DNA of 64,000 bases from the NCBI RefSeq assembly GCF_032444005.1, contig NC_091283.1, positions 159,464,001 to 159,528,000 on the forward strand, read 5' to 3'. The notes beneath the pieces were generated by a model. The model ran no database searches, was not told the DNA's origin, and saw nothing but the letters and a program-made list of their open reading frames with translations. Below are positions 1,375 to 52,003 of this stretch, piece by piece. How positions within the stretch are numbered: position 1 is the first letter of the stretch; every line of letters begins with the position of its first letter. A program made the translations under genes and the position numbers. Origin of the DNA: Ranitomeya imitator (lineage: Eukaryota).

Positions 1375-2213
1375 TAGACATAATAATCGATAATCCCATC
1401 ATTGTCCTTTCCACTGCCATCATCATTGTCTTCTCCCCCAAAACCCCCATCATTGCCCATTCCACGACCTCCATCATTTCCTCCTTCCCCACCATTGCCC
1501 TTTCCACCACCACCATCATTGTCTTTTCCCCCATCATTGCCTTTCCCCCCATCATTGCCTTTCCCCCCATCATTGCCCATTACACGGCCTCCATCATTTC
1601 CCCCTCCCCACCACCCCCATTATTGCCCATTCACCACCTACATAATTTCCTCCTCACCCATAACCCCCATTATTGTACTTTCCACCACCCCATCATTGCT
1701 TTCTCCCCCACCACCCCTATTATTGCCCTCTCCGTCAACCCAATCATTGCCTTCTGCCCCATAACCCCCATCATTGCCCTCTCTGTCAACCCAATCATTG
1801 CCTTCTGCCCCATCACCCCCATCATTGCCCTCTCCTCCACCTACACACACACAGACACACATAGCACCATTCACCTCTCTGCATACACATACACACACAC
1901 ACCTCTCTTCTGCACATGGTATGCTGAAGCACCATCACTGGCAGCTTTCTGTCTCACACAGTTGTGGCGCTGAATGATGATGCATTCCCAGCAGTTCCGC
2001 TCTACTGCCATTTTCTCTTGCATGCAGCGGAGCAGCAGGGATTGCTCCCTGCCCGCCGCAAATGAGGGTAATCTGGCCAGGGGCCCCCCGGAACCTCGGG
2101 GCTAGATAAACTGGCCAGATTGTCGTCATTATTAGCCGCCCTGCAGGGGCCCCCCCAGAGCCTCCGGGCTCCGATGCGACTGCACCGGTTGAACAGGCGG
2201 TATGTCCGTCCAT
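1375..2213. mobile_element. Non-autonomous hAT-like element fragment with C-rich (CCATCATTGCC-type) low-complexity expansion
   Basis: 1860-2213 is visibly homologous to the reverse complement of 32466-32830 (shared GAACCTCGGGGC, GGCCAGATTG, GCCCTGCA, TATGTCCG). Both copies abut the same low-complexity tract. No TSD found. Confidence 0.55.
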
Positions 2214-2739
2214 GGTGCCTATACTGTGTAGAGAGCACGCAGCTCCCTTCTGGCTGCACACAGACCCTCCACTCGCCTGACATGTAGCATCCACATTCTA
2301 TAGTTGTCTGATTCTTATAGCATGTGTATGGGCACCTTACGCCTCAGCATAATATAGGAATTGTGACAGTTTAGTTGCTCTTTAATGGGAATGAAGTTTC
2401 TTCTGACATTGCTCTCATGATGGAGGTCCCAGTGGTAACAGCCACAACCGACTCAGTGATATGGTGACTGCCTATTGCAGCCCACTGACAGGAGCTGAAA
2501 AAAAGTTTGTGTCACAGTCAGAAGTTTATTCAGTCTTTTGCTACTTATCTCAAATACTCATCTTTATTGTGAGCCCAAGTCAACAATGCAAGGAGTGACT
2601 GAATCCAGTGCAGGTGAGAAATGCGCCAGGGATAGCTGAGATCAGCAGAGGATGTGTCGGCTCTCCTGTGGTGTAGTATATAGAGGATATTATATTGTCC
2701 TGATACTCGGGGTATGGAATAATGATGCCAATACCCGGG

Positions 2740-3270
2740 TGCAGAACAACGAAGCTGGCACTCGGTATATGGGATAATGACACTGATATTCGGGGTATGG
2801 GATAATGACGCTGATATTCAGGGTACAGGATAATGACGCTGATATTCAGGGTACAGGATAATGACGCTGATATTCGGGGCACGGGATAATGACGCTGATA
2901 TTCGGGGTACGGGATAATGACGCTGATATTCGGGGCACGGGATAATGATGCTGATATTCGGGGCACGGGATAATGACGCTGATATTCGGGCAGGGGATAA
3001 TGACACATATTCGGGGCACGGGATAATTACGCTTAGGCCGGGGTCACACTTGTGTGTGCAATGCAAGAAACTCGCATCAATACCCGACACTGCCGCCGGC
3101 ACTTGGGACCATAGCGTGTGGCTACATGTATTTCTATGTAGCCGCACGCTCCAGTCCCGAGTGCCGGGTATTGATGTGCGAGTTTCTCGCATTGCACATG
3201 CAAGTGTGACCCCGGCCGTATACTCTGGATTCGGGACAATGACACTGATACTTGGAGTATAGGATAATGA
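2740..3270. repeat. 28-bp minisatellite, left part
   Basis: Unit GGGATAATGACGCTGATATTCGGGGTAC with period 28 (e.g. 2883 and 2911). Same family as 9985-11200. Confidence 0.9.
3036..3217. mobile_element. Harbinger-type palindromic MITE
   Basis: TIR GGCCGGGGTCACACTTG...CAAGTGTGACCCCGGCC, nearly fully palindromic, with flanks TTA/GTA. Same TIR as 14252-19454. Confidence 0.8.
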
Positions 3271-4234
3271 CTCTGGGGCAGTAGCGTAGCTACTGGGGGG
3301 GGCAGTGGGGGCCATCGCCCCGGGCCCTGTCACATGAAGGGGCCCACTTCTGTGACGAGGCAGAACACCGCATAGGAGCAGAGCAGTATAATGTCTGCTC
3401 CTATCTGACGGAGACTCTGCACGCTGGCGATTAGCACAGTGGCCGGCTGCAGTCTCCCTCCTGCAGTGAATGGTTTCGCCTGTCTGACCTGATCATGAAG
3501 CTTTTCCCAGGCTGCAGTTATCTTCACTCTGTGCACGCTGGGATTGGCTCAGGCACGCTGGGTCCTAGTGGCCACATCTTGCATTTCACATAGACACTTC
3601 CTGGTCCTGCCTGCAAACTTTATCAGTAAGTGTAGATGGAACAGTTTAGGTTTATTAAATTCAGGTATGTCACTGTGATGTGAATGTGAGACCATTGGGG
3701 TATTGTGGGCGCTGAAAGTGGGTGAGGGGGGACAGGCTACTGAGGGGGTGGATGTGAGATGATAGGGGTATTGGGTACTGAAGTGGGGGAGGGGAGACAG
3801 GGCACTGGGGGGGTAAATGTGAGACCATGGGGGTGTTGTGGGGGATATGATATTATATGTGCTCCATCATGTAATATTTGCTGTCTGGGGAGCCTGGAGA
3901 TGGGGGGCAGGGGGCTTTTGATGCGTACCACCAGAGTTTTTTATGAGTATTAGTATACGAAGCCCCCATACAGTAACCAAGAGCTGCATCACATTTACAG
4001 CACCACTCCAGCATTATTTTTTATTTCATTGCTGGAGCGGTGCTGAAAATCCAAGTCCCCTGCCCTCTGTCTGATACTCACCTTCTGGCGTTTTCATCTG
4101 TTTTTGTCTCTGCTCGGCTCCGTCGCCTGCAGTTTGTGACCTGTCCGCTGCTCCAGTGTTTTATGGAGCAGCGCAGAGTTCACTAATTAATGTGAGTCTA
4201 TGGGAGCCTCATTCTGGCCTCTTTCTCACTCTCA

Positions 4235-32465: not shown

Positions 32466-34502
32466 CAGGGGGCGGACATAGTGCATGTGCAGCGCGTTCA
32501 AACGCACCGGAGGTGGAGGGGGACCCTTGCAGGGCAGCTATCACTTGAGGGCAATCTGGCCTGTTTCTGCGGCCCCGAGGTTCAGGGGTCCCCTAGCTAG
32601 ATTGCTTTCATGTGCGGTAGCTAGGGATCGATCCCTGCAGCTCCAATCCATTTGCGGAGTGGAGCTGTAGTGATCCATCCTGCTTGCTGGCTACGTTTCC
32701 TGTCTGACACAGCAGCGCAGCTGGATGATGTCAGCATTCAGCGCTCGGCTGTGTTAGATAGAGGAAGCTGCTGGTGACGAAGATGCTGCGGGGGAGCGTG
32801 CGGAGAGGTGAGCGGTGCTGTGTGTGTGTGTGTGTGTGAACGTGCGGAGAGGTGTGTGTATGTATCTGTGTGTGTAGGCAGGCATGCAGGCAGGGAATGT
32901 TGAGGGTGGAGGTGGAGTAGGCAATGATGGAGGTGGGGAGAAGGCAATCGTAGAGGTGATGGAGAGAGCAATGATGGAGGTGTGTTTGTGTGGAAAATGT
33001 TAGGGGCGGTGGTGGAGAAGGCAATGATGGAGGTGGTGGGGGAGAAGACAGTGGTGGAGGTGGTGATGGAGGTGGTGGAGAGGGCAATGATGGAGGTGGT
33101 GGAGAGGGCAACCTTGCAGGTGGTGGCGAGAGCAATGATGGAGGTGGTAGGGAAAACAATGATTGGTGATGGGGAGAAAAGTGATTGCGGTGGTGGAGAG
33201 GGCAATGATGGAGGTGATGGGCAGGGCAATAATTGGAGAGGGCAATGATGGAGGTGGGGGAAGGCAATGATGGAGGTGGGGGAAGGCAATGATGGAGGTG
33301 GTGGCGAAGGCAATGATGGGTGGTGGCGAGGGCAATGATGGAGGTGGTGGAGAGAGCAATGATGTAGGTGGTGGAGAGAGCAGTGATGTAGGTGGTGGGG
33401 AAAACAATGATTGGGGTGGTGGAGATGGTAATGTGGGAGAACAATGATTGGGGTGGTGGGGGAGAACAGTGATTGGGGTGGCAGGGAGAGCAGTGTTGGA
33501 GGTAGTGGGGGAGAACAATGATTGGGGTGGTGAAGTCAATGATGGGGGAGAACAATGATTGGGGTAGTAGAGAGGGCAATAATTGGGGTGGTGGAGAGGG
33601 CAAGATGGAGGTGGTGGGGGAGAACAATGATTGGGGTGGTGGAGAGGGCAATGATGGAGGTGATGGGGAGGACAATTATTGAGATGGTGGAGAGGGCAAT
33701 GATGGAGGTGGTTGGGGAGAACAATGATTGGGGTGGTGGAGATGGCAATGATGGGAGTGGGGGAGATGGCAATGATGGGGATGATGGGGGAGGGCAGTGA
33801 TGGAGGTGATGGTGAGGGCAGTGATGGAGGTGATGGGGAGGGCAGTGATGGAGGTGATGGTGAGGGCAGTGATGGAGGTGATGGGGAGGGCAGTGATGGA
33901 GGTGATGGGGGAGTGCAGTGATGGAGGTGATGGGGAGGGCAATGATGGGGGTGGAGAGAGCAATGATGGAGGTGATGGGGAGAAAAATGATTGGGGTGGT
34001 GGGGAAGGCAATGATGGAGGAGGTGATGGGGAGGACAAAGATTTGGATGGAGAGGGCAATGAGGTGGTGGGGGAGAAGGCAGTGATGGAGATAATGGGGG
34101 AGGGCAATGATGGAGGTGATGGGGAGTGCAGTGATGGGGGTGGTGGAGAAGGCAATGATAGGAGTGGTGGAGAGGGAAATGATGGGAGTGATGGAGAGGG
34201 CAATGAATGGGAGTGGTGGAGAGAGCAATGATGAGGGTGGTGGAGAGAGCAATGATGAGGGTGGTGGAGAGAGCAATGATGAGGGTGGTGGAGAGGGCAA
34301 TGATGAGGGTGGTGGAGAGGGCAATGATGAGGGTGGTGAGAGGGAAATGATGGGATGTGGGGGGAAGTCAATGAGGAATATGGGAAATTGGGATGGGAGG
34401 AAGGGGGGGCTTATGATTGACTTATGAACAGGGGAGGGAGAGGAGGACATTAGATAAAGATGTAAATTGAATTGAGTGGTGGAGGAGGGTGCTAAGCCCC
34501 TG
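32466..34502. mobile_element. hAT-like non-autonomous element with ~1.5-kb purine-rich low-complexity expansion
   Basis: CAGGGGGCGGACATA left end and a possible CCCCTG right end. GGTGGAGAGGGCAATGATGGA-type repeats at ~32900-34350. Homologous to 1375-2213. No TSD found. Confidence 0.55.
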
Positions 34503-35603
34503 ATAGTGTGCATAGGATAAGGTGCATAGGATGCTTTATAATGAATTGAAAGGTGGGAGAAGATCCTGGCAGCGACTTTTAATGAATTGTGAGGTGGCTG
34601 AGGATGCTCATTACATGATAGCGTCTTCTCCCACCCCCAAATTCATTTTGATGCTATCAAGTACTTATAATGAATAGAGGGACACATGACAGGGACTAAG
34701 GTTATGTGCACACATTCAGGATTTGCAGGAGAAAGTTCTGCTGCATGTCCTAATGTGTTGGCAGGAAGAAAGTTGCGTAAAATACATTTTTACCCTTCGC
34801 CACGACAGCACCCCACATGAGAGAGAGGGATCCGCCCATAGGAACAGGAAACCTACAGAATAAAAGGAGGCGGTCCCCTCTCCTCCTCAGTTTAGGTTTC
34901 CTGTTCCTACAGGGACCCGGCTTACCTACAGATGAAGAGGATCCCTGGGCCATGCACCCGCCTGCGCCGGTTTCTGTGGGAACGGCAGGGGCTGCGGTAC
35001 CAGAAGCAGCGGCGGGGGAGCCCCTGCATGCAGCCTCCCCCCTCGTCTGGCCAAACATCCACGGTCCGGGTCCGGTCACCGTTGGTCCGGCCGGCACTGT
35101 GAGGACGCGCGCGCTGCAGCGGCCGGCTTAATAGCCTCCGGCTGCCGCATGGTGATGAGAGCGGCGCGTCTAACCCGGAAGTCGCGGGAGCACTTCCGGG
35201 TTGGTCCGGGGAGGCAGGAGAATGGGCGGCAGTTTTAAAAATGCAGCGCTAGCGTCGGGCCGGTGTGTGTGAAATGGCTTCACCGGCCGACGAAGCGCAC
35301 CTGCCCGCAGTGCAACAGCGCTCTCCCAGCAGGGAGAGAAGCACGAGGAGCAGCACAAAGAGTGGTGGCCGACCTCCAGAGAAGAGTTCTACCACCAAAC
35401 GAATTCCGCCTCCAGAACCGGTACCTGTCAGCTTCACTGGGTGAGTTTTTGAAAGAGTCTCTTCCTATATGCTGATATATGTTCCTCCTGTATCCTTCCT
35501 CTAGACTAAGAAAAGGACACACAAATCTAAGCATAAAGAGTGTGCTTTATGTACGCAGCCCCTCCCGGATGATTATGCCAAAAAACTGTGTGCAGAGTGT
35601 ATC

Positions 35604-36728
35604 ATGCAAACTCTACGGCAGGAAAATATCATGACTCCCTCAGATGTCAGAGCTATTATCCGAGAAGAGATGCAGGGTTTGGCGCAGACAAGTAGCGCCA
35701 GTACCCGTCAGCCTAGCAGGTCCCGGTCTCCGGTTAGTTCGGAGTCAGAGGGTGTCTGTATTTCTTCAGACGAAGAGGGATCTCAGCCGAGCTCATCCGA
35801 GACTGAAGGGGGACTTTGTCTTCCCAACAGTAATGTGGACAATTTAATAAAATCTGTCAGGAGCACGATGGGGTGCCCAGATGGGAAAGAAAAGAAATCA
35901 GCACAGGACATAATGTTTGCGGGGTTAGGACAGAGGAAACGTAGGTCCTTCCCCGTCATACAAACCATCAAAGATATTGTTAAGAAGGAGTGGGACAAGC
36001 AGAATAGAGGGTTTTTACCATCATCCTCTAAAAGGCGCTATCCCTTCAGCGATGAAGACCTAAACACCTGGTCAAAGGTGCCAAAAGTTGATGCTGCGGT
36101 AGCCTCCACAACCAAACAGTCGGTCCTACCAGTGGAGGATTCAGGGGTCCTGACAGACCCGCCGGACCGTAAAGCAGAAGCTTTACTAAAGAGGTCATGG
36201 GAAGTCAATACGGGGGCGTTCAGGCCCGCCATATCTAGTACCTGTACTGCAAGATCTCTACTAGTATGGACAGAGCAATTGGAGGAACAGATTAGAGGCA
36301 AAACTTCGAGGGAATCTATCCTGCTGAAATTGCCTCAAATTAAAGAAGCAGTAGCATTCCTAGCTGATGCCTCAGTGGACTCGCTACGTCTTGCAGCCAG
36401 GTCAGCCGGCCTAGTCAACACAGCCCGGCGTGCACTCTGGCTAAAGAATTGGAAGGGGGACGCACAAGCTAAAGCGAAACTTTGTGCGATTCCCTGTCAG
36501 GGTGAGTTCCTTTTTGGGAAGACGCTGGATGAACTCCTGAATAAAGCAGGTGAAAGGAAGAAAGGCTTCCCTAACCAGTATCTTCCATCCTACAGGAGAG
36601 CCTTCAGGAGACGCCCCTTTACTAGGAACAAGCCGCTTGAACAAAGAGAGCGATGGGAGTCGAAGGACCCAAAGCAAAAAGGTGCCTTTTTTAGCGGGTC
36701 CCATAATCCGAGACGTAAATACCGCTAA
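35604..36728 (+). CDS. DIRS1 ORF1 Gag-like protein (374 aa from the first Met; frame open from 35505 including a C4 Zn-finger)
   Basis: First ORF of the element. Contains LAARSAGLVNTARRALWLKNW...LFG, typical of vertebrate DIRS Gag-like ORFs. Upstream in frame: CALC-x12-CAEC. Confidence 0.8.
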   Translation: MQTLRQENIMTPSDVRAIIREEMQGLAQTSSASTRQPSRSRSPVSSESEGVCISSDEEGSQPSSSETEGGLCLPNSNVDNLIKSVRSTMGCPDGKEKKSAQDIMFAGLGQRKRRSFPVIQTIKDIVKKEWDKQNRGFLPSSSKRRYPFSDEDLNTWSKVPKVDAAVASTTKQSVLPVEDSGVLTDPPDRKAEALLKRSWEVNTGAFRPAISSTCTARSLLVWTEQLEEQIRGKTSRESILLKLPQIKEAVAFLADASVDSLRLAARSAGLVNTARRALWLKNWKGDAQAKAKLCAIPCQGEFLFGKTLDELLNKAGERKKGFPNQYLPSYRRAFRRRPFTRNKPLEQRERWESKDPKQKGAFFSGSHNPRRKYR

Positions 36729-38613
36729 CCAGGAAGTAGGCGGCAGATTAAAATTTTTTCTTCCCCAATGGGAACAGATAACATCCAGCCAGTGGATTCT
36801 GGACATTGTGCAATACGGCCTTAAATTAGAATTTGATCGAATCCCTTGGGATTCCTTCATAATAACATCTCCAAAAGGTCAGGACCAACAGAGGGCTCTA
36901 GAAATAGAGATCCTATCTCTTCTATCTAAAAAAGTCCTGATAGAAGTTCCCCAGGATCAAAAAGGGAAAGGGTTCTACTCCCCTTTATTCCTGATTAATA
37001 AACCAGATGGTTCATTTAGAACCATCATAAATCTTAAAAAATTAAATTCTTTCCTGCGTTATCATACCTTCAAAATGGAATCCATTAGTTCTACCATAAA
37101 ACTCTTATTCCCTAGGTGTGTCATGGCCGGAATAGACTTAAAGGACGCCTATTACCATCTTCCCATACATGCCGAACATCAGCAGTACCTAAGGGTAGCA
37201 GTCACCCTGGAGGGAAAGGTTCGTCACTTTCAGTATGTTGCAATGCCATTTGGGCTTTCTATGGCTCCCCGCGTCTTCACTAAGGTGATACTAGAAGTGA
37301 TGGCTCATCTACGCCAACGAGATACCTTGATAATACCCTACCTAGATGACTTTCTAGTGGTAGGAAGCTCTGCACTTCAATGTAAAACTCGTCTATCTAA
37401 TACGATCTCGTCCCTACAGGAGTTAGGTTGGATCGTCAACTTCGAAAAATCTCGGCTGAAACCAGAAACTGTTCAGACATTTCTAGGAATCCAGCTAGAC
37501 TCCGTAAGTCAGAAATGCTTTCTTCCTCAGTCAAAGAGGTTGACTATACAATCAAAGGTATCAGACGCAATACGCAAACCCTACATGACACTAAGAAAGG
37601 CCATGTCCTTACTGGGGTCATTATCATCATGTATCCCTGCTGTACCTTGGGCACAATTCCATACCCGTCAATTGCAGTACGAAGTATTGTCGGCTCAGGG
37701 GAAAGACGGTTATCTAGAAAGTAGAATAACTCTTTCCAGTAATGTCTTAGAATCGCTATCCTGGTGGCTAGACATGGACCACCTATCACGGGGTGTGCCA
37801 TGGATAATAGACCCGTCTAAAATAATTACCACCGACGCCAGCCCTATTGGGTGGGGAGCACATATGGAAGACAATCTGGCCCAAAATACTTGGGATCAGA
37901 CAGAATTAATATGTTCCTCCAACTGGAAGGAGTTAAAAGCAATAGAATGTGCCTTATATCATTTTCTTCCGCAGATTCATGGAACAAATGTAAGAATTTA
38001 CTCAGACAATTCCACCGCAGTGGCATACTTGAACCGTCAGGGTGGTACAAAGTCAGGAAGTCTGATGACCATAGCTGCAAACATCTTTCAGCTGGCAGAG
38101 GCTCATCTAACATCCTTAACAGCCCTGCACATCAAAGGTGTAGAGAACATCAGGGCAGACTACCTCAGCAGAAACGAGTTGCGTCAAGGAGAATGGACCT
38201 TAAACAAATCCATATTCAGAAGGATAACAGAAGCATGGGGGATACCACAAATCGACCTATTTGCCACAAGAGACAACCGGCAAGTACAAAGGTTCGCTTC
38301 CCTGAACACCAGGGATCACCCAGATATGTTGGACTCTCTCCACCATCCTTGGCGGTTCAGACTGGCATATGCCTTTCCTCCAATGTCTCTGATTCCTCTA
38401 GTGATCAGAAAGATCAGGAGGGAACAGGCAAGAGTAATCATCATTGCACCATTCTGGCTGAAAAGACCATGGTTCTCTTGTCTCCAGACCATGTGCCTAT
38501 GCGATCCTTGGATCCTCCCATCAGACAAGGAGCTGCTGTACCAAGGCCCCTTTTTCCACCCGCAAGTGAAAGGTCTTCACTTGACGGCGTGGAATTTGAG
38601 AGGCAACTATTAA
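36550..38613 (+). CDS. DIRS1 ORF2: RT - RNase H - adenine methyltransferase-like domain
   Basis: IDLKDAY, MPFGL, YLDDFL (RT); TTDAS and YSDN (RNase H); IDLFAT and YAFPP (MT-like). The track start is GTG and the first ATG (37075) lies inside the RT domain. Confidence 0.92.
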   Translation: MKGRKASLTSIFHPTGEPSGDAPLLGTSRLNKESDGSRRTQSKKVPFLAGPIIRDVNTANQEVGGRLKFFLPQWEQITSSQWILDIVQYGLKLEFDRIPWDSFIITSPKGQDQQRALEIEILSLLSKKVLIEVPQDQKGKGFYSPLFLINKPDGSFRTIINLKKLNSFLRYHTFKMESISSTIKLLFPRCVMAGIDLKDAYYHLPIHAEHQQYLRVAVTLEGKVRHFQYVAMPFGLSMAPRVFTKVILEVMAHLRQRDTLIIPYLDDFLVVGSSALQCKTRLSNTISSLQELGWIVNFEKSRLKPETVQTFLGIQLDSVSQKCFLPQSKRLTIQSKVSDAIRKPYMTLRKAMSLLGSLSSCIPAVPWAQFHTRQLQYEVLSAQGKDGYLESRITLSSNVLESLSWWLDMDHLSRGVPWIIDPSKIITTDASPIGWGAHMEDNLAQNTWDQTELICSSNWKELKAIECALYHFLPQIHGTNVRIYSDNSTAVAYLNRQGGTKSGSLMTIAANIFQLAEAHLTSLTALHIKGVENIRADYLSRNELRQGEWTLNKSIFRRITEAWGIPQIDLFATRDNRQVQRFASLNTRDHPDMLDSLHHPWRFRLAYAFPPMSLIPLVIRKIRREQARVIIIAPFWLKRPWFSCLQTMCLCDPWILPSDKELLYQGPFFHPQVKGLHLTAWNLRGNY

Positions 38614-39626
38614 GTTCCAGAGGGTTCTCAACAGAACTAGTAAACACCCTCTTATTGAGCAGGAAAAGATCTACCACCCTAATATATAGTAGGGTATGGA
38701 ATACATTTTTAGACTTCTACACGGTACCGTTCACTAAGCAAGTTCCACTCACACCTATCCTAGAGTTCTTGCAAAAAGGCCGAGAGTTAGGACTATCTGT
38801 AAATACCTTAAGAGTTCAGGTCTCGGCATTAGGAGCCCTATATGGATGCAATATAGCAGCTAATAGGTGGATCTCCAGATTCATAAAATCTTGTGAACGT
38901 AGTAAACCGGTCCATATTCCCCGTCTACCTCCGTGGGATTTAAATCTAGTATTAGAGGCCTTAACAAGCTCTCCATTTGAACCATTAGATTCAATACCTT
39001 TAAAAATCCTAACATATAAAGTAGCCTTACTAGTAGCCCTAACCTCAGCTAGACGGGTTAGTGACATCCAGGCCCTATCAGTAGACCCACCTTTCTTACT
39101 GATATTTCATGATCGGATAGTCCTGAAACCAGACCCCTCATACCTCCCTAAGGTAGCGTCCACCTACCACAGGTCACAAGAAATATTTCTCCCTTCCTTT
39201 TTTGATTCACCTGTAACTCCAGAACAACATAAGTTCCACACCTTAGATGTCAGAAGAGCCATCCTGACTTATATAGAAAGGTGTCAGACATGGAGGGAGA
39301 GTAGGGCTCTGTTTATCTCCTTTCAGGGCCACAAGAAAGGACATGGGGTCACGAGAGCTACCATATCTCGGTGGATCAGAGATGCTATCTGCTTGGCCTA
39401 TACGTCAAAAGGCGAGATTCCTCCAGTGGGTATAAAAGCGCACTCAACACGAGCCATGGCTTCCTCCTGGGTGGAACAAGCAGATGTACCGATCCATTTA
39501 ATATGTAAGGCTGCAACTTGGTCTACACCTTCTACCTTATACAACCATTATAGACTTGATCTGTCCACGTCTTCTGATCTGACCTTTGGTAGAGCTGTTC
39601 TTAATACAGTAATCCCACCCAAATAA
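37851..39626 (+). CDS. DIRS1 ORF3 tyrosine recombinase (recombinase-like sequence from ~38600)
   Basis: SARRVSD (Arg), AHSTRAMA (HxxR) and YNHY (Tyr). Overlaps ORF2 by ~760 nt. Confidence 0.9.
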   Translation: MGSTYGRQSGPKYLGSDRINMFLQLEGVKSNRMCLISFSSADSWNKCKNLLRQFHRSGILEPSGWYKVRKSDDHSCKHLSAGRGSSNILNSPAHQRCREHQGRLPQQKRVASRRMDLKQIHIQKDNRSMGDTTNRPICHKRQPASTKVRFPEHQGSPRYVGLSPPSLAVQTGICLSSNVSDSSSDQKDQEGTGKSNHHCTILAEKTMVLLSPDHVPMRSLDPPIRQGAAVPRPLFPPASERSSLDGVEFERQLLSSRGFSTELVNTLLLSRKRSTTLIYSRVWNTFLDFYTVPFTKQVPLTPILEFLQKGRELGLSVNTLRVQVSALGALYGCNIAANRWISRFIKSCERSKPVHIPRLPPWDLNLVLEALTSSPFEPLDSIPLKILTYKVALLVALTSARRVSDIQALSVDPPFLLIFHDRIVLKPDPSYLPKVASTYHRSQEIFLPSFFDSPVTPEQHKFHTLDVRRAILTYIERCQTWRESRALFISFQGHKKGHGVTRATISRWIRDAICLAYTSKGEIPPVGIKAHSTRAMASSWVEQADVPIHLICKAATWSTPSTLYNHYRLDLSTSSDLTFGRAVLNTVIPPK

Positions 39627-40934
39627 TGACTCTCTGAAAATCTCTCATGTGGGGTGCTGTCGTGGCGAAGGGTAAAAAGCCGGATTACGTACCGGTAATG
39701 CTCTTTTAATGAGTCCACGACAGCACCCATATATTACCCTCCCTAAATTATGCACAGCTCTTTCCTTTAAGGTCACAAATAATGGTTGTATAGAGTTAAG
39801 AAATTTATGTGACTGAATAAGAATGAATACTAACACTTTTGCGGTTCCCTTTTTATACTCTGTAACTAAACTGAGGAGGAGAGGGGACCGCCTCCTTTTA
39901 TTCTGTAGGTTTCCTGTTCCTATGGGCGGATCCCTCTCTCTCATGTGGGGTGCTGTCGTGGACTCATTAAAAGAGCATTACCGGTACGTAATCCGGCTTT
40001 TTTTCCACATTTTTCCCATGCTTTTTGTTTTTTCCCCCATTGGTATGGTGAAATACGCTGCAAGAATTGACAATATGCAGATTTTCATCTGCTGCAAATC
40101 TGCAAGGAAAAAATAATCAGCGTGTGCATGACACTTTAGGGATCTCATTCACTTACCTTGTACTGTAAAGCCTTATTCCGAGTGTACATACATAGTGTAT
40201 TCACTTATGTATAGCACAGTCCCTTAGTATATAGTGTACTCACTTATGTATAGCACAGTCATTTAGTATATAGTGTACTTACTTTTTATGTATAGCACAG
40301 TCCCTTAGTATATAGTATACTCACTTATTATGTATAGCACAGTCCCTTCGTATATAGTAGTAGATGGTGGCCCGATTCTAACGCATCGGGTATTCTAGAA
40401 TATTTATGTATGTATATTGCAGCCACATAGTATATAGCACAGGCCACGTAGTATATAGGAGCCATGTAGTATATAGCAGACAAATACTACGTGGCCTGTG
40501 CTATATACTATGTGGCTGCTATATACATACATATTGTAGAATACCCGATGCATTAATACAGGCCACGCAATATATAACAGTGGCCACACAGTATATAACA
40601 CAGCCATGTACTATATAACACAGCCCACGCAGTATATAGCAGCCACGTAATATATAATACAGCCCACGCAGTATATAGCAGCCACGTAGTATATAACACT
40701 GCCCACGCAGTATATAGCAACCACGTAGTATGTAACGCTGCCCACGCAGTATATAGCAACCATGTAGTATATAACACTGCCCACACACTATATAGCAGCC
40801 ACATAGTATATAACACTGCCCACGCAGTATATAACAGTGGCCACGTAATATATAGCACAGCCCACGCAGTATATAGCACAGCCCACAGAGTATATCACAC
40901 AGCCCACATAGTTTATAACACTGTCTATGTAGTA

Positions 40935-42544
40935 CAGGTCCTTCTCAAAAAATTAGCATATAGTGTTAAATTTCATTATTTACCATAATGTAATGATTAC
41001 AATTAAACTTTCATATATAATAGATTCATTATCCACCAACTGAAATTTGTCAGGTCTTTTATTGTTTTAATACTGATGATTTTGGCATACAACTCCTGAT
41101 AACCCAAAAAACCTGTCTCAATAAATTAGCATATCAAGAAAAGGTTCTCTAAACGACCTATTACCCTAATCTTCTGAATCAACTAATTAACTCTAAACAC
41201 ATGCAAAAGATACCTAAGGCTTTTATAAACTCCCTGCCTGGTTCATTACTCAAAACCCCCATCATGGGTAAGACTAGCGACCTGACAGATGTCAAGAAGG
41301 CCATCATTGACACCCTCAAGCAAGAGGGTAAGACCCAGAAAGAAATTTCTCAACAAATAGGCTGTTCCCAGAGTGCTGTATCAAGGCACCTCAATGGTAA
41401 GTCTGTTGGAAGGAAACAATGTGGCAGAAAACGCTGTACAACGAGAAGAGGAGACCGGACCCTGAGGAAGATTGTGGAGAAGGACCGATTCCAGACCTTG
41501 GGGAACCTGAGGAAGCAGTGGACTGAGTCTGGTGTGGAAACATCCAGAGCCACCGTGCACAGGCGTGTGCAGGAAATGGGCTACAGGTGCCGCATTCCCC
41601 AGGTAAAGCCACTTTTGAACCATAAACAGCGGCAGAGGCGCCTGACCTGGGCTACAGAGAAGCAGCACTGGACTGTTGCTAAGTGGTCCCAAGTACTTTT
41701 TTCTGATGAAAGCAAATTTTGCATGTTATTCGGAAATCAAGGTGCCAGAGTCTGGAGGAAGACTGGGGAGAAGGAAATGCCAAAATGCCTGAAGTCCAGT
41801 GTCAAGTACCCACAGTCAGTGATGGTGTGGGGTGCCATGTCAGCTGCTGGTGTTGGTCCACTGTGTTTCATCAAGGGCAGGGTCAATGCAGCTAGCTATC
41901 AGGAGATTTTGGAGCACTTCATGCTTCCATCGGCTGAAATGCTTTATGGAGATGAAGATTTCATTTTTCAGCACGACCTGGCACCTGCTCACAGTGCCAA
42001 AACCACTGGTAAATGGTTTACTGACCATGGTATTACTGTGCTCAATTGGCCTGCCAACTCTCCTGACCTGAACCCCATAGAGAATCTGTGGGATATTGTG
42101 AAGAGAAAGTTGAGAGACGCAAGACCCAACACTCTGGATGAGCTTAAGGCCGCTATTGAAGCATCCTGGGCCTCCATAACATCTCAGCAGTGTCACAGGC
42201 TGATTGCCTCCATGCCACGCCGCATTGAAGCAGTCATTTCTGCCAAAGGATTCCCGACCAAGTATTGAGTGCATAACTGAACATTATTATTTGTTGGTTT
42301 TTTTGTTTGTTATTAAAAAACACTTATTTGATTGGATGGGTGAAATATGCTAATTTATTGAGACAGGTTTTTTGGGTTATCAGGAGTTGTATGCCAAAAT
42401 CATCAGTATTAAAACAATAAAAGACCTGACAAATTTCAGTTGGTGGATAATGAATCTATAATATATGAAAGTTTAATTGTAATCATTACATTATGGTAAA
42501 TAATGAAATTTAACACTATATGCTAATTTTTTGAGAAGGACCTG
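40935..42544 (+). mobile_element. Tc1 family A, copy 2 (intact)
   Basis: Same TIRs as 12492-14103 and TA TSD. Confidence 0.95.
41264..42268 (+). CDS. Tc1 DD34E transposase (334 aa)
   Basis: Differs from 12821-13825 at 4 residues in the ORF track (F>L, S>L, E>K, I>T). Confidence 0.93.
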   Translation: MGKTSDLTDVKKAIIDTLKQEGKTQKEISQQIGCSQSAVSRHLNGKSVGRKQCGRKRCTTRRGDRTLRKIVEKDRFQTLGNLRKQWTESGVETSRATVHRRVQEMGYRCRIPQVKPLLNHKQRQRRLTWATEKQHWTVAKWSQVLFSDESKFCMLFGNQGARVWRKTGEKEMPKCLKSSVKYPQSVMVWGAMSAAGVGPLCFIKGRVNAASYQEILEHFMLPSAEMLYGDEDFIFQHDLAPAHSAKTTGKWFTDHGITVLNWPANSPDLNPIENLWDIVKRKLRDARPNTLDELKAAIEASWASITSQQCHRLIASMPRRIEAVISAKGFPTKY

Positions 42545-49672: not shown

Positions 49673-52003
49673 TTACCCCCCCCTCCTAAGTACTGGTACA
49701 CTATCAATCACTCTGAACCTAAGCTGATTCACTGAATGTTTGTTATCAACAAAGTGTTTGGGTACTGGCAATTCCGTGAGGCCTGTTCTCACTGTACTCT
49801 TATGTTTATTGATGCGTGCCCTCACCTCCATGGTTGTTTCACCAACGTAGGTGAGTCCACAAGGGCACACAATCATGTATATAACGTAGCTTGAAGCACA
49901 CGTATATCTCTCCTTAAGAAATTTTTTTTTACCCGTATGCAGGTGATGAAAAAACTCCCCTTTCAACATATTGTTACAGCAAGAGCAACCCAAACAAGGA
50001 AAATTGCCATTTTTGACTGTACTTAGGGTACTTTGAACAGATTTTCTCGAGGTCCCAATATCTGACTTCACAAGTCTGTCTTTAAAGTTACGTCCCCTTC
50101 TGAATGACATCATGGGGAATAACTCAAAATTAGAGACAGAGGGCACACCACGTTGTAACAGGGACCAATGTCGTCTCAAAATATTCCCAACACGATTGCT
50201 GGCTGAACTGTAAGTGGATACAAAAGGAATCCTATCCTTGGTTGACTCGACACGAGTCTTGTTCCGAATACTCGACCTAGAGCAACTACTAGCCTTAATT
50301 TTGTATCTGGCTATCTCCCTTGTTGGATACCCCCTAGAGATGAACTTATGACACATTTCACCAAGTCTTATATCGACACGTTCCTCATCTGACACAATAC
50401 GCCTAACCCTCAAAAGTTGGCTCCACGGAAGGGAACCAACCATTTTTCTCGGGTGATTACTATCAAAGGCCAATAGTCCATTCCTATCGGTTTCCTTGAT
50501 AAAGATGTCAGTCTCTAGTTTATTACCACACCTATATACTAAGGTGTCCAAAAATTGTATCTGTGTGGTGGACTGTGTCAGGGTGAATTGTAGTTCAGGG
50601 TATATTTGGTTCAGAGACACATGGAAGGCCTCTAACTCCAAAGAGGTCCCCTCCCATATCACAAAAATATCATCAATGTATCGCCACCAGGCTCTGACGT
50701 GGCGCCAGAGGATGGAATTGTACACGAACCCATCCTCAAGTACCGCCATGTAGATGTTAGCATACGTGGGGGCCACATTGGACCCCATGGCGGTACCTCT
50801 CAATTGCAAGAAAAACTCATCCCCAAACAGAAAAAAATTCCGCCTGAGGATGAATTCAAGCAACGTGAGGATGAGCCGTGCACACTCAGGGGCCACGTCA
50901 GAGCCTGATAGCACACATGAAACTGCTTCAAGACCTTTATCATGTTCGATGGAGGTATATAAAGATACCACATCAAATGAAGCCAAAATGGTGGACTCAG
51001 AAACCGTTATATTTTCGATCTTATTCAAAAAGTCCCCCGTATCCCGGATATAGGACTTTGCTGATGTAGCATATGATCTTAATACCCGGTCCAAAAAGAT
51101 CGCAACATTGTTAAAGAGAGAACCCCTCCCCGACACAATGGGTCGCCCCGGGGGATTGTACAGATCTTTATGTATTTTTGGTAATACATATAATACCGGG
51201 ACCACCGGAGTCTCAATCATCAAGAAATCAGCCAGCTTGTGGTCAATGAGTCCCAAGGCAAGGGAGTCACTGACCACAAGCTGTAATTCCCTCTGGAAAC
51301 GGGATGTGGGATTACAGGATAATTTCTCATAGACAGCCCCATCGTCCAATTGTCTCAATATTTCCGCCCTATATTTGGCACTGTCCATGACCACCACCGC
51401 TCCACCCTTATCCGCTGGTTTAATGGTTATTAGGGAGTTATCCGCCAGAGCTTTCAGCGTATTTCTTTCGGCCACTGTCAAATTATGGACCTGGGTAGAT
51501 TTAAACTCTTTCTTCAATTTCTCAACATCCCCACATACCAGTTGCACATAAGATTCTACAAAATGATTCCTATTAGGTGGTTGAAAATTGCTTTTGCAGT
51601 ATAGGCCCACCCCTTTCAGAGTAAAGCCATTCTCAATGCTAGCTGAATTGGTATTGGGGATTTCAGAGTTCCCCGATTTCTCAGAAAAAAAGGTAGATAA
51701 TCTTAATCTCCTGAAAAAAGCCTGTAGATCTACCTCCAACGCAAACCAGTCAGGGTTGTATGTGGGGCAAAATGATAACCCCTTGGACAGTACCTTAATT
51801 TCCATATCAGACAGAGTAATAGACGAGATATTCACAACCAACTCCTTACTGTCATCTAGTTGTCCTTCCTGTTCCTTGTCCTCATAACGGCATTCCGTCC
51901 AGGCCGTTGCTCCCGGGATGTCCCTCCATTTCTTGTGTTTACGACCCCCTCTCCGACCACGTCTCCGGGAGTGGTTTTGTCCACCTTCTCTTGGCCTAAA
52001 AAA
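49673..52003 (-). CDS. Penelope-like ORF2: reverse transcriptase plus GIY-YIG endonuclease (no upstream AUG; premature stop at 49673)
   Basis: KPADKGG, LPKIHK, SFDVVSLY, GTAMG, RYIDD; linker CLGCSCC..H; VIYMIVCPCGLTYVGET and RINKH. The frame is open from 52024. An 8-G run precedes the stop. Confidence 0.92.
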   Translation of the reverse strand, partial: FFRPREGGQNHSRRRGRRGGRKHKKWRDIPGATAWTECRYEDKEQEGQLDDSKELVVNISSITLSDMEIKVLSKGLSFCPTYNPDWFALEVDLQAFFRRLRLSTFFSEKSGNSEIPNTNSASIENGFTLKGVGLYCKSNFQPPNRNHFVESYVQLVCGDVEKLKKEFKSTQVHNLTVAERNTLKALADNSLITIKPADKGGAVVVMDSAKYRAEILRQLDDGAVYEKLSCNPTSRFQRELQLVVSDSLALGLIDHKLADFLMIETPVVPVLYVLPKIHKDLYNPPGRPIVSGRGSLFNNVAIFLDRVLRSYATSAKSYIRDTGDFLNKIENITVSESTILASFDVVSLYTSIEHDKGLEAVSCVLSGSDVAPECARLILTLLEFILRRNFFLFGDEFFLQLRGTAMGSNVAPTYANIYMAVLEDGFVYNSILWRHVRAWWRYIDDIFVIWEGTSLELEAFHVSLNQIYPELQFTLTQSTTQIQFLDTLVYRCGNKLETDIFIKETDRNGLLAFDSNHPRKMVGSLPWSQLLRVRRIVSDEERVDIRLGEMCHKFISRGYPTREIARYKIKASSCSRSSIRNKTRVESTKDRIPFVSTYSSASNRVGNILRRHWSLLQRGVPSVSNFELFPMMSFRRGRNFKDRLVKSDIGTSRKSVQSTLSTVKNGNFPCLGCSCCNNMLKGEFFHHLHTGKKKFLKERYTCASSYVIYMIVCPCGLTYVGETTMEVRARINKHKSTVRTGLTELPVPKHFVDNKHSVNQLRFRVIDSVPVLRRGG

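What the first reader, a model, noticed from the sequence alone, without database searches (positions are those of the whole stretch)
36502..36595. Cryptic 94-nt intron that would splice DIRS Gag in frame to RT/RNase H/MT
Seen: inside gag there is a strong donor CAG G|GTGAGT (36502), a branch-point match CTAAC (36571-36575), a pyrimidine tract TATCTTCCATCCTA and an acceptor CAG| (36595). Joining 36501 to 36596 gives CAG G|GA GAG CCT, i.e. Gag ...PCQ-G-EPSGDAP..., in the ORF2 frame. The ORF2 frame opens only after TGA 36538-36540, inside this intron, and has no AUG until 37075, within RT. Established: DIRS ORFs overlap, and some LTR elements (e.g. copia) set Gag:Pol ratio by splicing. Inference: intron retention gives Gag and splicing gives a ~970-aa Gag-Pol. 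This could explain how vertebrate DIRS Pol is expressed, and I do not recall it being described.
Basis: partly seen in the sequence, partly recalled or inferred. Interest (0 to 1): 0.8.

Follow-up and report, generated by a model that had tools for sequence, protein, structure and literature searches.

The report
Possible Gag-Pol splice in frog DIRS
An intact jumping gene (DIRS retrotransposon) of a poison frog carries a very convincing 94-base intron inside its coat-protein gene. Removing it would fuse that gene in frame to the polymerase gene. This may replace the ribosome-slip signal that related frog elements carry, but no RNA evidence for the splice could be obtained.

Summary
**Observation: confirmed.** The window holds one intact DIRS1-like element (about 34787-40002). 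AGG|GTGAGT (36502), CTAAC (36571-75) and a pyrimidine tract plus CAG| (36595) bound 94 nt inside gag. Joining 36501^36596 gives a 971-aa Gag-Pol. This product is colinear without gaps with NCBI gene models from Ranitomeya and Dendrobates.

**Interpretation: partly supported.**
- For:
  - Only 2 site pairs this good occur in 128 kb.
  - Only 1.5% of synonymous recodings of gag keep such a pair.
  - Gene models place the same junction in at least four deeply diverged subfamilies that form one clade (introns of 94, 94 and 97 nt).
- New context:
  - Six other frog DIRS families have the same +1 gag/pol layout.
  - Five of them carry an in-frame CCC_UUU_CGN; the sixth carries UUU_UUU_CGC and UCC_UUU_CGG. 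UUU_CGN is the influenza PA-X / amalgavirus +1 frameshift motif.
  - The window's family has CCC_UUU_ACU, and pol has no AUG before 37075.
- Against:
  - No junction contig appeared in four runs. These were contigs only, and their RNA status is a guess.
  - Gene models are noisy.
  - The "intron" encodes a conserved Gag motif.
  - The donor is absent outside the clade.

Other notes of this scan reported 5' gag introns in DIRS copies of this genome. I put about 0.5 on a real Gag-Pol splice.

The parts
34787..40002 (+). Full-length, intact DIRS1-like retrotransposon
   Evidence: Inverted terminal repeats and the internal complementary region were located. All three ORFs are intact. It is the only DIRS copy in the window.
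34800..34895 (+). Left inverted terminal repeat; its partner is 39866-39961
   Evidence: The two 96-nt arms are 100% complementary (I1).
39641..39728 (+). Internal complementary region
   Evidence: 39641-39678 is complementary to the left end (34787-34824). 39674-39728 is complementary to the right end plus its extension (39948-40002). Both (I7, I2).
35441..35504 (+). Candidate 5' leader intron (64 nt; CTGG|GTGAGT ... CCTTCCTCTAG|A), upstream of the gag zinc-motif exon
   Evidence: The sequence is shown. Homologous short introns occur in L003 (58 nt) and L008, and the acceptor is present in L006. In this copy the strong donor is out of phase with the upstream ORF (ATG 35274). A weaker conserved donor, CCG|GTACC at 35421, is in phase.
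35604..36728 (+). gag ORF (374 aa from the first ATG), with a LAP2alpha-type domain
   Evidence: The frame continues upstream to 35505 and encodes a CxxC...CxxC motif that has no ATG of its own.
36499..36507 (+). Donor AGG|GTGAGT, phase 1 in gag (Gly codon G|GT)
   Evidence: It is the only donor in the element that scores at least 6.0.
36502..36595 (+). Candidate 94-nt alternatively spliced intron. When retained it encodes Gag residues EFLFGKTLDELLNKAGERKKGFPNQYLPSYR.
   Evidence: The encoded motif is conserved across frog DIRS Gag proteins. The stretch is retained in all contigs laid on it.
36571..36575 (+). Branch-point-like CTAAC
   Evidence: The A at 36574 lies 21 nt upstream of the acceptor G.
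36580..36595 (+). Pyrimidine tract and acceptor CAG|
   Evidence: The gene model P0021 joins a foreign upstream exon to the homologous acceptor in another subfamily.
36541..38613 (+). pol frame (RT / RNase H / methyltransferase-like), +1 relative to gag. Its first AUG is at 37075.
36615..36623 (+). CCC_TTT_ACT at the position where six other frog DIRS families carry an in-frame TTT_CGN (five of them CCC_TTT_CGN). The +1 frameshift motif is absent here.
37821..39626 (+). Tyrosine-recombinase reading frame (first ATG at 37911). It overlaps the 3' end of pol by about 790 nt.
37955..37974 (+). Second strong acceptor-like site (CATTTTCTTCCGCAG|A). It is in phase with the donor at 36502 and would give an 849-aa Gag-recombinase ORF.
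   Evidence: No gene model shows this junction.

Best explanation
**The element.** It is a young, intact DIRS1-like retrotransposon of a dendrobatid frog. The nearest proteins are from Ranitomeya imitator and R. variabilis.

**Proposed mechanism.**
- The unspliced RNA encodes Gag. This includes the conserved C-terminal FLFG..LD..L.KAG motif and the basic tail.
- In a fraction of transcripts the spliceosome removes the 94-nt protein-coding interval 36502-36595, an exitron-type intron. The donor is in phase 1 and the length is 1 mod 3.
- Translation that starts at the gag AUG then continues in the +1 frame. The result is a 971-aa Gag(1-299)-Gly-Pol fusion.
- The splice ratio, not ribosomal recoding, would set the Gag:Gag-Pol ratio.

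**Evolutionary reading.** In this clade of poison-frog DIRS subfamilies the splice replaces the +1 ribosomal frameshift site UUU_CGN (CCC_UUU_CGN in most). Related frog DIRS families keep that site eight codons downstream of the acceptor position.

**Shown**
- The sites, the frames and the statistics.
- The clade-wide placement of the junction in gene models.
- The presence of the frameshift motif in relatives and its absence here.

**Inferred**
- That splicing happens at all.
- That it yields the functional Pol.
- That UUU_CGN acts as a frameshift site in the relatives.
For: **Signals and arithmetic**
- The signals and coordinates are confirmed.
- Comparable donor/acceptor pairs are rare: 2 in 128 kb. 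Given the Gag protein sequence and the element's codon usage, P is about 0.015.
- The in-silico spliced product aligns over its whole length with 0 gaps to the R. variabilis model P0001 (90% identity).

**Clade-wide junction**
- The same junction codon, PC[QE]G|E.., appears in models of subfamilies only 57-61% identical to the window's spliced product.
- Gene span minus CDS gives 94 nt (P0001), 94 nt (P0004) and 97 nt (P0006). P0006's subfamily has one extra Gag codon.
- All spliced-type families form one clade (support 100/99) with long internal branches. GGT at the Gly codon and AGR at the acceptor have therefore persisted where synonymous sites should be saturated. GGT makes up only 16-28% of Gly codons in these elements.

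**No other route to Pol in this element**
- The pol frame has no AUG before 37075, which lies inside RT.
- The whole element contains no TTTCG, and the overlap holds no Ty1-, Ty3- or antizyme-type motif.

**Relatives use a frameshift motif instead**
- L002, L003, L006/7, L008 and L010 all carry in-frame CCC_TTT_CGN. All four CGN codons occur among them.
- L004/5 carry TTT_TTT_CGC and TCC_TTT_CGG.
- The chance of the CCC_TTT_CGN codon choice is 0.03-0.07 per family, given the P-F-R residues.
- UUU_CGN is an established or proposed +1 frameshift motif (PMC5052127).

**Splicing is plausible for these elements**
- They also carry a conserved 5' leader intron.
- An earlier paper inferred that a DIRS gag sequence brought a splice acceptor into host genes (PMC4495291).
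Against: - **No RNA evidence.** The dominant contigs of four runs from four studies span 36502-36595 unspliced, and no 36501^36596 joint was listed. These are assembled contigs, which drop minor forms, and their RNA status is only guessed.
- **Gene models are predictions and are noisy.**
  - An ENA model (P0089) bridges the frames with a different 46-nt intron that starts at 36550.
  - P0125 uses a donor at 36682.
  - P0038 (Pseudophryne) shows a bridging junction in a family whose relatives carry UUU_CGN.
- **Site resemblance follows partly from the protein.** Gly-Glu-Phe gives GGT GAG T. Phe/Pro/Ser/Tyr-Arg gives a pyrimidine tract plus AG.
- **The donor is nearly perfect.** That sits uneasily with an RNA that must mostly stay unspliced to encode Gag and to serve as the template for copying.
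- **The spliced Gag-Pol would lack a highly conserved Gag motif.** Frameshift-type fusions in related families would keep it.
- **Phase conservation is not independent evidence.** Indels inside gag must be multiples of three anyway.
- **DNA of the other dendrobatid subfamilies could not be read.** The assemblies were too large to be served.
Confidence: 0.5

Rival explanations
1. The splice-like sites are a by-product of Gag coding and shared ancestry, and are not used. Pol is made from unspliced RNA by an unrecognised +1 (or -2) recoding event somewhere in 36541-36728. Possible places are CCC_UUU_A (36615-36621) or GCC_UUU_UUU_A (36684-36693).
For: - The +1 gag/pol layout is shared with six families that carry a frameshift motif and, in five of the six, no GT at the homologous codon. 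Recoding therefore looks like the ancestral mechanism.
- Only retained-form contigs were seen.
- Gene predictors bridge such frames even in frameshift-type families (P0038; P0089).
- CCC_TTT is still present at the ancestral site.
Against: - The A-site codon here is ACU, not CGN.
- tRNA-Phe cannot re-pair on UUA, and no known +1 motif lies in the overlap.
- A chance origin of the site pair has P of about 0.015 given the protein.
- Chance does not explain the persistence of GGT and AGR across a deep clade.
Confidence: 0.3
2. The sites are recognised by the splicing machinery, but not to make Gag-Pol. Examples are U1 binding that protects the long RNA from premature cleavage, or splicing that down-regulates Gag or feeds other isoforms such as a Gag-recombinase mRNA through the acceptor at 37974.
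For: - The donor is the only strong one in the element.
- It is in phase with two strong internal acceptors, 36595 and 37974.
- The annotations list several isoforms at DIRS-derived loci.
Against: - No model and no contig shows the 36501^37975 junction.
- This reading still leaves Pol without a route to expression.
Confidence: 0.08
3. This family no longer expresses its own Pol in cis and is mobilised by Pol from other DIRS families in the genome. The pol frame is then a recent relic, and the splice-like sites are irrelevant.
For: - DIRS-1 reverse transcriptase can act in trans in Dictyostelium (PMC7192593).
- Many DIRS families coexist in this genome.
Against: - The pol ORF is intact here and in dozens of gene models in three species. 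Identity is 81-90% within the family with no stops.
- That pattern indicates continuing purifying selection on pol in this family.
Confidence: 0.07

Closest known systems
Alternative splicing that sets the Gag:Pol ratio in Ty1/copia elements (Drosophila copia; barley BARE, PMC3735527; Arabidopsis Copia elements, PMC5580714)
   Same: One retroelement transcript is used both unspliced and spliced. The splice ratio, rather than recoding, sets the relative amounts of Gag and Pol.
   Different: - In copia-type elements gag-pol is a single ORF, and splicing removes pol to give a Gag-only mRNA.
- Here the unspliced RNA would give Gag, and splicing would create the Gag-Pol fusion.
- It would do so by excising a short coding segment whose length shifts the frame.
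- The element is a tyrosine-recombinase (DIRS) element, not an LTR/integrase element.
Foamy virus (Spumaretrovirinae) Pol expression from a spliced mRNA (from my own knowledge)
   Same: Pol depends on splicing rather than on frameshifting or readthrough.
   Different: - Foamy virus Pol is made as a separate protein from a subgenomic mRNA, using a leader donor.
- Here the donor lies deep inside gag and the product would be a Gag-Pol fusion.
- In this element the leader donor (35441) joined to the acceptor at 36595 gives the gag frame, not the pol frame.
UUU_CGN +1 programmed ribosomal frameshifting (influenza A PA-X UCC_UUU_CGU; plant amalgaviruses; PMC5052127)
   Same: Relatives of this element (L002, L003, L004/5, L006/7, L008, L010) have pol in the +1 frame. 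They carry in-frame (C/U)CC_UUU_CGN, or UUU_UUU_CGC in L004/5, within the gag-pol overlap.
   Different: The window's own family has CCC_UUU_ACU at that position and no TTTCG anywhere in the element. It works differently, or has lost this mechanism.
Ty1 (CUU_AGG_C) and Ty3 (GCG_AGU_U) +1 frameshifting for Gag-Pol (from my own knowledge)
   Same: Pol is in the +1 frame relative to gag, and a Gag-Pol fusion is the expected product.
   Different: Neither heptamer occurs in frame in 36541-36728.
Exitrons: alternatively spliced introns that lie inside protein-coding exons (from my own knowledge)
   Same: The excised interval is coding, has no stop in the retained frame, and encodes a conserved peptide. 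Both isoforms would be translated.
   Different: Most described exitrons that give two protein isoforms are a multiple of three in length. This one is 1 mod 3 on purpose, so that it switches to an overlapping ORF.
Intron-containing Penelope-like retroelements (from my own knowledge)
   Same: A retroelement whose genomic copies keep a spliceosomal intron.
   Different: It belongs to a different element class, and in Penelope-like elements the intron is not used to join two reading frames.

Membership tests
DIRS1-like retrotransposon (order DIRS) | Tyrosine recombinase instead of a DDE integrase, and no protease | tested here: met
   ORF3 matches PF00589 Phage_integrase, below Pfam's own cut-off (E 3.7e-4). 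Its homologues are the tyrosine-recombinase ORFs of frog DIRS elements. No protease or integrase hit was found.
DIRS1-like retrotransposon (order DIRS) | RT / RNase H followed by a methyltransferase-like domain in ORF2 | tested here: met
   RVT_1 scores 63 bits. The RT_RNaseH and Dam-like matches are weak and fall below Pfam's cut-offs.
DIRS1-like retrotransposon (order DIRS) | Inverted terminal repeats plus an internal complementary region that matches both ends | tested here: met
   The 96-nt inverted repeats are 100% complementary. 39641-39678 and 39674-39728 are complementary to the left and right termini.
DIRS1-like retrotransposon (order DIRS) | Gag-like ORF1 with a LAP2alpha-type domain, as in vertebrate DIRS (PMC9210276, PMC4495291) | tested here: met
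   PF11560 matches with E 1.1e-19.
U2-type GT-AG spliceosomal intron | Consensus donor, branch point, pyrimidine tract, an AG acceptor and a workable length | tested here: met
   AGG|GTGAGT, CTAAC at -21, a pyrimidine tract and CAG|G, over 94 nt.
U2-type GT-AG spliceosomal intron | Exon-exon junction observed in RNA | tested here: inconclusive
   No 36501^36596 joint appeared in four runs. These runs are assembled contigs of unrecorded library type. No RNA-labelled run could be listed.
U2-type GT-AG spliceosomal intron | Splice sites conserved among diverged relatives beyond what coding requires | tested here: inconclusive
   Within the dendrobatid clade this is met, but only indirectly through gene models. 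It is not met in L003, L004, L006, L008 or L010, which have no GT at the homologous codon. L002 has a weaker GTGACC with an in-phase 88-nt interval.
UUU_CGN +1 ribosomal frameshift site | In-frame UUU_CGN inside the ORF1/ORF2 overlap, with ORF2 in the +1 frame | tested here: not met
   The window has CCC_TTT_ACT and no TTTCG anywhere in the element. The feature is met in six related frog families.
Exitron (coding, alternatively spliced internal intron) | The retained form is an uninterrupted coding sequence under protein-level constraint | tested here: met
   The gag frame is open through 36502-36595. The encoded motif G[EQDK].[LF]FG..LD..L.KA....FP is conserved in Gag proteins of many frog DIRS families.

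The most novel reading that the evidence does not exclude
A clade of poison-frog DIRS retrotransposons has replaced an ancestral PA-X-type +1 ribosomal frameshift (CCC_UUU_CGN, still present in other frog DIRS families) with an alternatively spliced, protein-coding intron of 94-97 nt. Removing this intron shifts the reading frame and makes Gag-Pol. The same donor may also feed a second acceptor (37974) to make a Gag-recombinase fusion. Together with the 5' leader intron, this would give these elements a retrovirus-like, splice-coded expression programme.
Probability: 0.4. Interest if true: 0.8.

Novelty: new variant of a known kind. Interest (0 to 1): 0.6.

Why it matters
**The open question.** How DIRS elements translate their overlapping ORFs has never been established. 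The reviews and surveys I could read describe the overlaps but mention neither splicing nor a frameshift signal (PMC3266345, PMC9210276, PMC3783388).

**What this work offers.** It yields two concrete, testable mechanisms for vertebrate DIRS:
- a UUU_CGN +1 frameshift in several frog families;
- a frame-shifting intron in the dendrobatid clade.

**If both hold:**
- They would document an evolutionary switch between translational recoding and alternative splicing for the same task, setting the Gag:Pol ratio.
- A tyrosine-recombinase retroelement would be shown to need an RNA that is both spliced and exported unspliced.

**Practical consequence for annotation.** Hundreds of "uncharacterized protein" gene models in poison-frog genomes are DIRS Gag-Pol predictions. 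Their single intron is either real biology or a systematic artefact.

Tried and rejected
1. **RNA evidence.**
   - Two run searches were made. One listed 18 runs (16 of which hold the stretch), none recorded as RNA. The second, filtered on "RNA-Seq", listed none.
It showed only intron-retaining contigs and no joint.
   - I treat this as uninformative, not as a refutation.
2. **Spliced transcripts among Logan-derived proteins.** A search with the junction part of P0001 found none. The two Logan hits are a gag-only protein (P0135) and an indel-fused copy (P0141).
3. **P0120 / L009.** This looked like a spliced gag-pol transcript. It is an internal gag deletion derivative without GT-AG borders.
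4. **"One leader exon feeds pol".**
   - In L003 the leader donor is in phase with the pol-region acceptors.
   - It is not in phase in L008 or in the window.
   - I rejected this as a general model.
5. **Length of the gag/pol overlap as evidence for where the frame changes.**
   - Synonymous recoding leaves the +1 frame open in 44-100% of trials.
   - Openness is therefore mostly a by-product of Gag tail composition, and I dropped the argument.
6. **Phase and length conservation of the intron.** This is not independent evidence, because gag coding forces indels to be multiples of three.
7. **Gene models as proof.** Rejected. P0089 (46-nt intron), P0125 (donor at 36682) and P0038 show that predictors bridge the frames opportunistically.
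8. **DNA of the other dendrobatid subfamilies.** It could not be fetched because the assemblies were too large.
9. **Gag-recombinase junction.** No gene model shows it.
10. **Literature.** I found no description of splicing or of a frameshift motif in DIRS elements.
Full report
**1. What is in the window.**
- Positions 34787-40002 hold one complete DIRS1-like retrotransposon on the + strand.
- Its 96-nt inverted terminal repeats (34800-34895 and 39866-39961) are 100% complementary. An internal complementary region (39641-39728) matches both termini.
- It has three intact ORFs:
  - gag, 35604-36728, with a LAP2alpha-type domain (E 1e-19);
  - an RT / RNase H / methyltransferase-like ORF, in a frame that opens at 36541 and ends at 38613;
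  - a tyrosine-recombinase frame, 37821-39626.
- It is the only DIRS copy in the window.
- The closest proteins are annotated in Ranitomeya imitator (99%) and R. variabilis (90%). The host is therefore a dendrobatid poison frog.

**2.
- The exon would end ...CAG G at 36501. GTGAGT starts at 36502, CTAAC is at 36571-75 (21 nt before the acceptor), and TATCTTCCATCCTACAG ends at 36595. The interval is 94 nt.
- gag is in frame 0 and pol in frame +1. The donor is in phase 1.
- The join reads ...AIPCQ-G-EPSGDAPLL... and gives a 971-aa ORF.
- The pol frame has no AUG before 37075, which is already inside RT.

**3. Is it more than chance?**
- I used an approximate donor/acceptor weight matrix with values recalled from memory, for ranking only.
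  - This is the only strong donor in the element.
  - Only two pairs this good, 60-150 nt apart, exist on both strands of the 64-kb window. The other is antisense to a Penelope-like ORF and is presumably chance.
- The sites overlap codons for Gly-Glu-Phe and Tyr-Arg. I therefore recoded the same Gag residues 20,000 times with the element's own codon usage. An equally good in-phase pair arose in 1.5% of recodings.

**4. Relatives inside dendrobatids.**
- NCBI gene models from R. variabilis, R. imitator and Dendrobates tinctorius include many Gag-Pol fusions of about 900-970 aa. Their junction lies at exactly this codon:
  - PCQG|EPS.. and PCQG|ELS.. (the window's subfamily);
  - PCEG|EPL..;
  - PCQG|ELSES..;
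  - PCQ-E-GRSGS..;
  - PCRG|IPS...
- Gene span minus CDS gives a single intron of 94 nt (P0001), 94 nt (P0004) and 97 nt (P0006). P0006's subfamily has one extra Gag codon in the interval.
- The window's in-silico product is colinear with P0001, with no gap.
- In a pol tree all spliced-type families form one clade (support 100/99) with long internal branches. The subfamilies are 57-61% identical to the window's spliced product.
- So GT (Gly = GGT, 16-28% of Gly codons) and AG (Arg = AGR) have persisted where synonymous sites should be saturated.
- Caveats:
  - I could not read the DNA of those copies.
  - Subfamilies lacking the sites would not have produced such models.
  - Phase conservation is automatic inside a coding region.

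**5. The gene models are not proof of splicing.**
- An ENA model of the same family (P0089) bridges the frames with a different 46-nt interval that starts at 36550.
- P0125 uses a donor at 36682 and runs into a non-coding frame.
- P0038 (Pseudophryne) has a bridging junction in a lineage whose relatives carry a frameshift motif.
- Predictors clearly look for any GT-AG that yields a long ORF.
- One model (P0021) joins an unrelated upstream exon to the homologous acceptor. That is mildly suggestive of real acceptor use.

**6. The interval is coding when retained.**
- The 31 residues it encodes (EFLFGKTLDELLNKAGERKKGFPNQYLPSYR) belong to the most conserved Gag motif in frog DIRS families. So does the basic tail that follows, with its ..RGFLF.. 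motif.
- The unspliced reading is therefore functional.
- If the splice is real, this is an exitron-type intron, and Gag-Pol would lack that motif.

**7. Relatives outside the clade change the picture.**
- Logan contigs supplied DNA for six further frog DIRS families: L002, L003, L004/5, L006/7, L008 and L010. Their pol proteins are 41-53% identical to the window's.
- In every one of them pol is again +1 relative to gag.
- The homologous Gly codon is GGG or GGA, with no GT, in L003, L004, L006, L008 and L010. L002 has a weak GTGACC.
- Instead, five families carry in-frame CCC_TTT_CGN at the conserved Gag "RPFR" position. Between them they use CGG, CGA, CGC and CGT, whereas neighbouring Arg codons are mostly AGR.
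- L004/5 carry TTT_TTT_CGC and TCC_TTT_CGG.
- A +1 slip at that point gives an open frame into pol.
- Given the residues, the chance of this codon choice is 0.03-0.07 per family.
- UUU_CGN is the +1 frameshift motif shown for influenza A PA-X and proposed for amalgaviruses. Its measured efficiency was about 1-2% (PMC5052127).
- I found no paper that links this motif to retrotransposons.
- The window has CCC_TTT_ACT at this position (36615-36623), eight codons after the candidate acceptor. The whole element contains no TTTCG.
- The Gag proteins of the spliced-type subfamilies read PFT, PFG or TFN there, though one subfamily-B gag model (P0129) still reads RPFR.
- The clade that has the intron-like sites is thus the clade that appears to have lost the frameshift motif. 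This counts as one evolutionary event, not many.

**8. RNA evidence.**
- No run recorded as RNA could be listed.
- Contigs of four runs from four studies all cross 36502-36595 unspliced. No 36501^36596 joint was reported.
- Contigs drop minor isoforms, and the runs may be DNA. The result therefore neither confirms nor refutes a minority splice.

**9. Other splicing in the element.**
- Upstream of gag lies a short intron-like interval, 35441-35504. It has GTGAGT, a pyrimidine tract and TAG|.
- Clear homologues exist in L003 (58 nt) and L008, and the acceptor is present in L006.
- It precedes a CxxC...CxxC Gag motif that has no AUG of its own. That motif can therefore only be translated after splicing.
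- Other notes of this scan report the same feature, and one was followed up.
- An earlier paper inferred that a DIRS gag carried a splice acceptor into host genes (PMC4495291).
- These elements are thus plausibly spliceosome substrates.
- In this copy the leader donor is not in phase with the acceptor at 36595, so only the gag-internal donor can feed pol.
- The same donor is also in phase with the next strong acceptor, at 37974. That join would give an 849-aa Gag-recombinase ORF. No model shows it.

**10. Verdict.**
I give it about 0.5.
- It is not a general explanation for vertebrate DIRS Pol, and it lacks any RNA proof.
- The main rival, at about 0.3, is an unrecognised recoding event in 36541-36728, with the sites being coding by-products.
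- The closest known systems are:
  - splicing-controlled Gag/Pol expression in copia-type elements (PMC5580714, PMC3735527);
  - Pol expression from a spliced mRNA in foamy viruses (my own knowledge).
- Both differ from this case in direction and architecture.
- I rate the finding a new variant of a known kind, with interest 0.6. The UUU_CGN motif in sister families is an independent by-product that deserves its own test.

Noticed in passing
L002:127-135, L003:1355-1363, L006:1180-1188, L007:1044-1052, L008:1336-1344, L010:274-282, L004:2286-2294 and 2346-2354: Six non-dendrobatid frog DIRS families carry an in-frame TTT_CGN in the gag/pol(+1) overlap: CCC_TTT_CGN in five, and TTT_TTT_CGC plus TCC_TTT_CGG in L004. 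This is the influenza PA-X / amalgavirus +1 frameshift motif. It is a candidate general mechanism for Pol expression in these elements, and I found no description of it.
   Followed up: partly
window 35441-35504 (also L003:142-199, L008:166-228): A short (58-64 nt) intron-like interval lies in the 5' leader, just before a Gag CxxC...CxxC motif that has no AUG of its own. A conserved CCG|GTACC lies 20-25 nt upstream of the strong GTGAGT donor and is in phase with the leader ORF in all three families. The GTGAGT donor itself is out of phase in the window.
   Followed up: partly
window 37955-37974: A strong acceptor-like site (CATTTTCTTCCGCAG|A) lies just after the recombinase frame opens. It is in phase with the gag donor at 36502 and would give an 849-aa Gag-recombinase ORF. 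The chance of correct phase alone is 1 in 3, and no gene model shows this junction.
   Followed up: partly
L009:374-3967 (Logan contig of SRR5149439): A DIRS derivative with an internal gag deletion of about 490 nt. Its truncated gag, pol and recombinase frames are fused into one 1197-aa ORF. The deletion borders are not GT-AG.
   Followed up: yes
L013:735-1844 and 1841-3886 (ENA metagenome contig): A distant DIRS-like element whose gag stop and pol start overlap as ATGA, with pol in the -1 frame and carrying its own AUG. It represents yet another gag-pol arrangement.
   Followed up: no
window 49851-49942 (+): The only other high-scoring donor/acceptor pair in the window. It lies antisense to a 722-aa Penelope-like ORF (49673-51841, - strand) and is probably a chance match.
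   Followed up: partly
window 33500-34500 and 40200-40940: The DIRS element is flanked by tandem-repeat arrays. Upstream is a G-rich repeat with a 24-nt period. Downstream are repeats with 39-42-nt and 21-nt periods rich in GTATATAGCA.
   Followed up: no
window 34886 / 39854 and 34900 / 39948: Contigs from public runs join the right end of the element back to the left inverted repeat (with TATA between them, run X4) or skip the whole interior (run X1). These may reflect tandem or circle-junction forms, solo termini, or alignment ambiguity within the inverted repeats.
   Followed up: no
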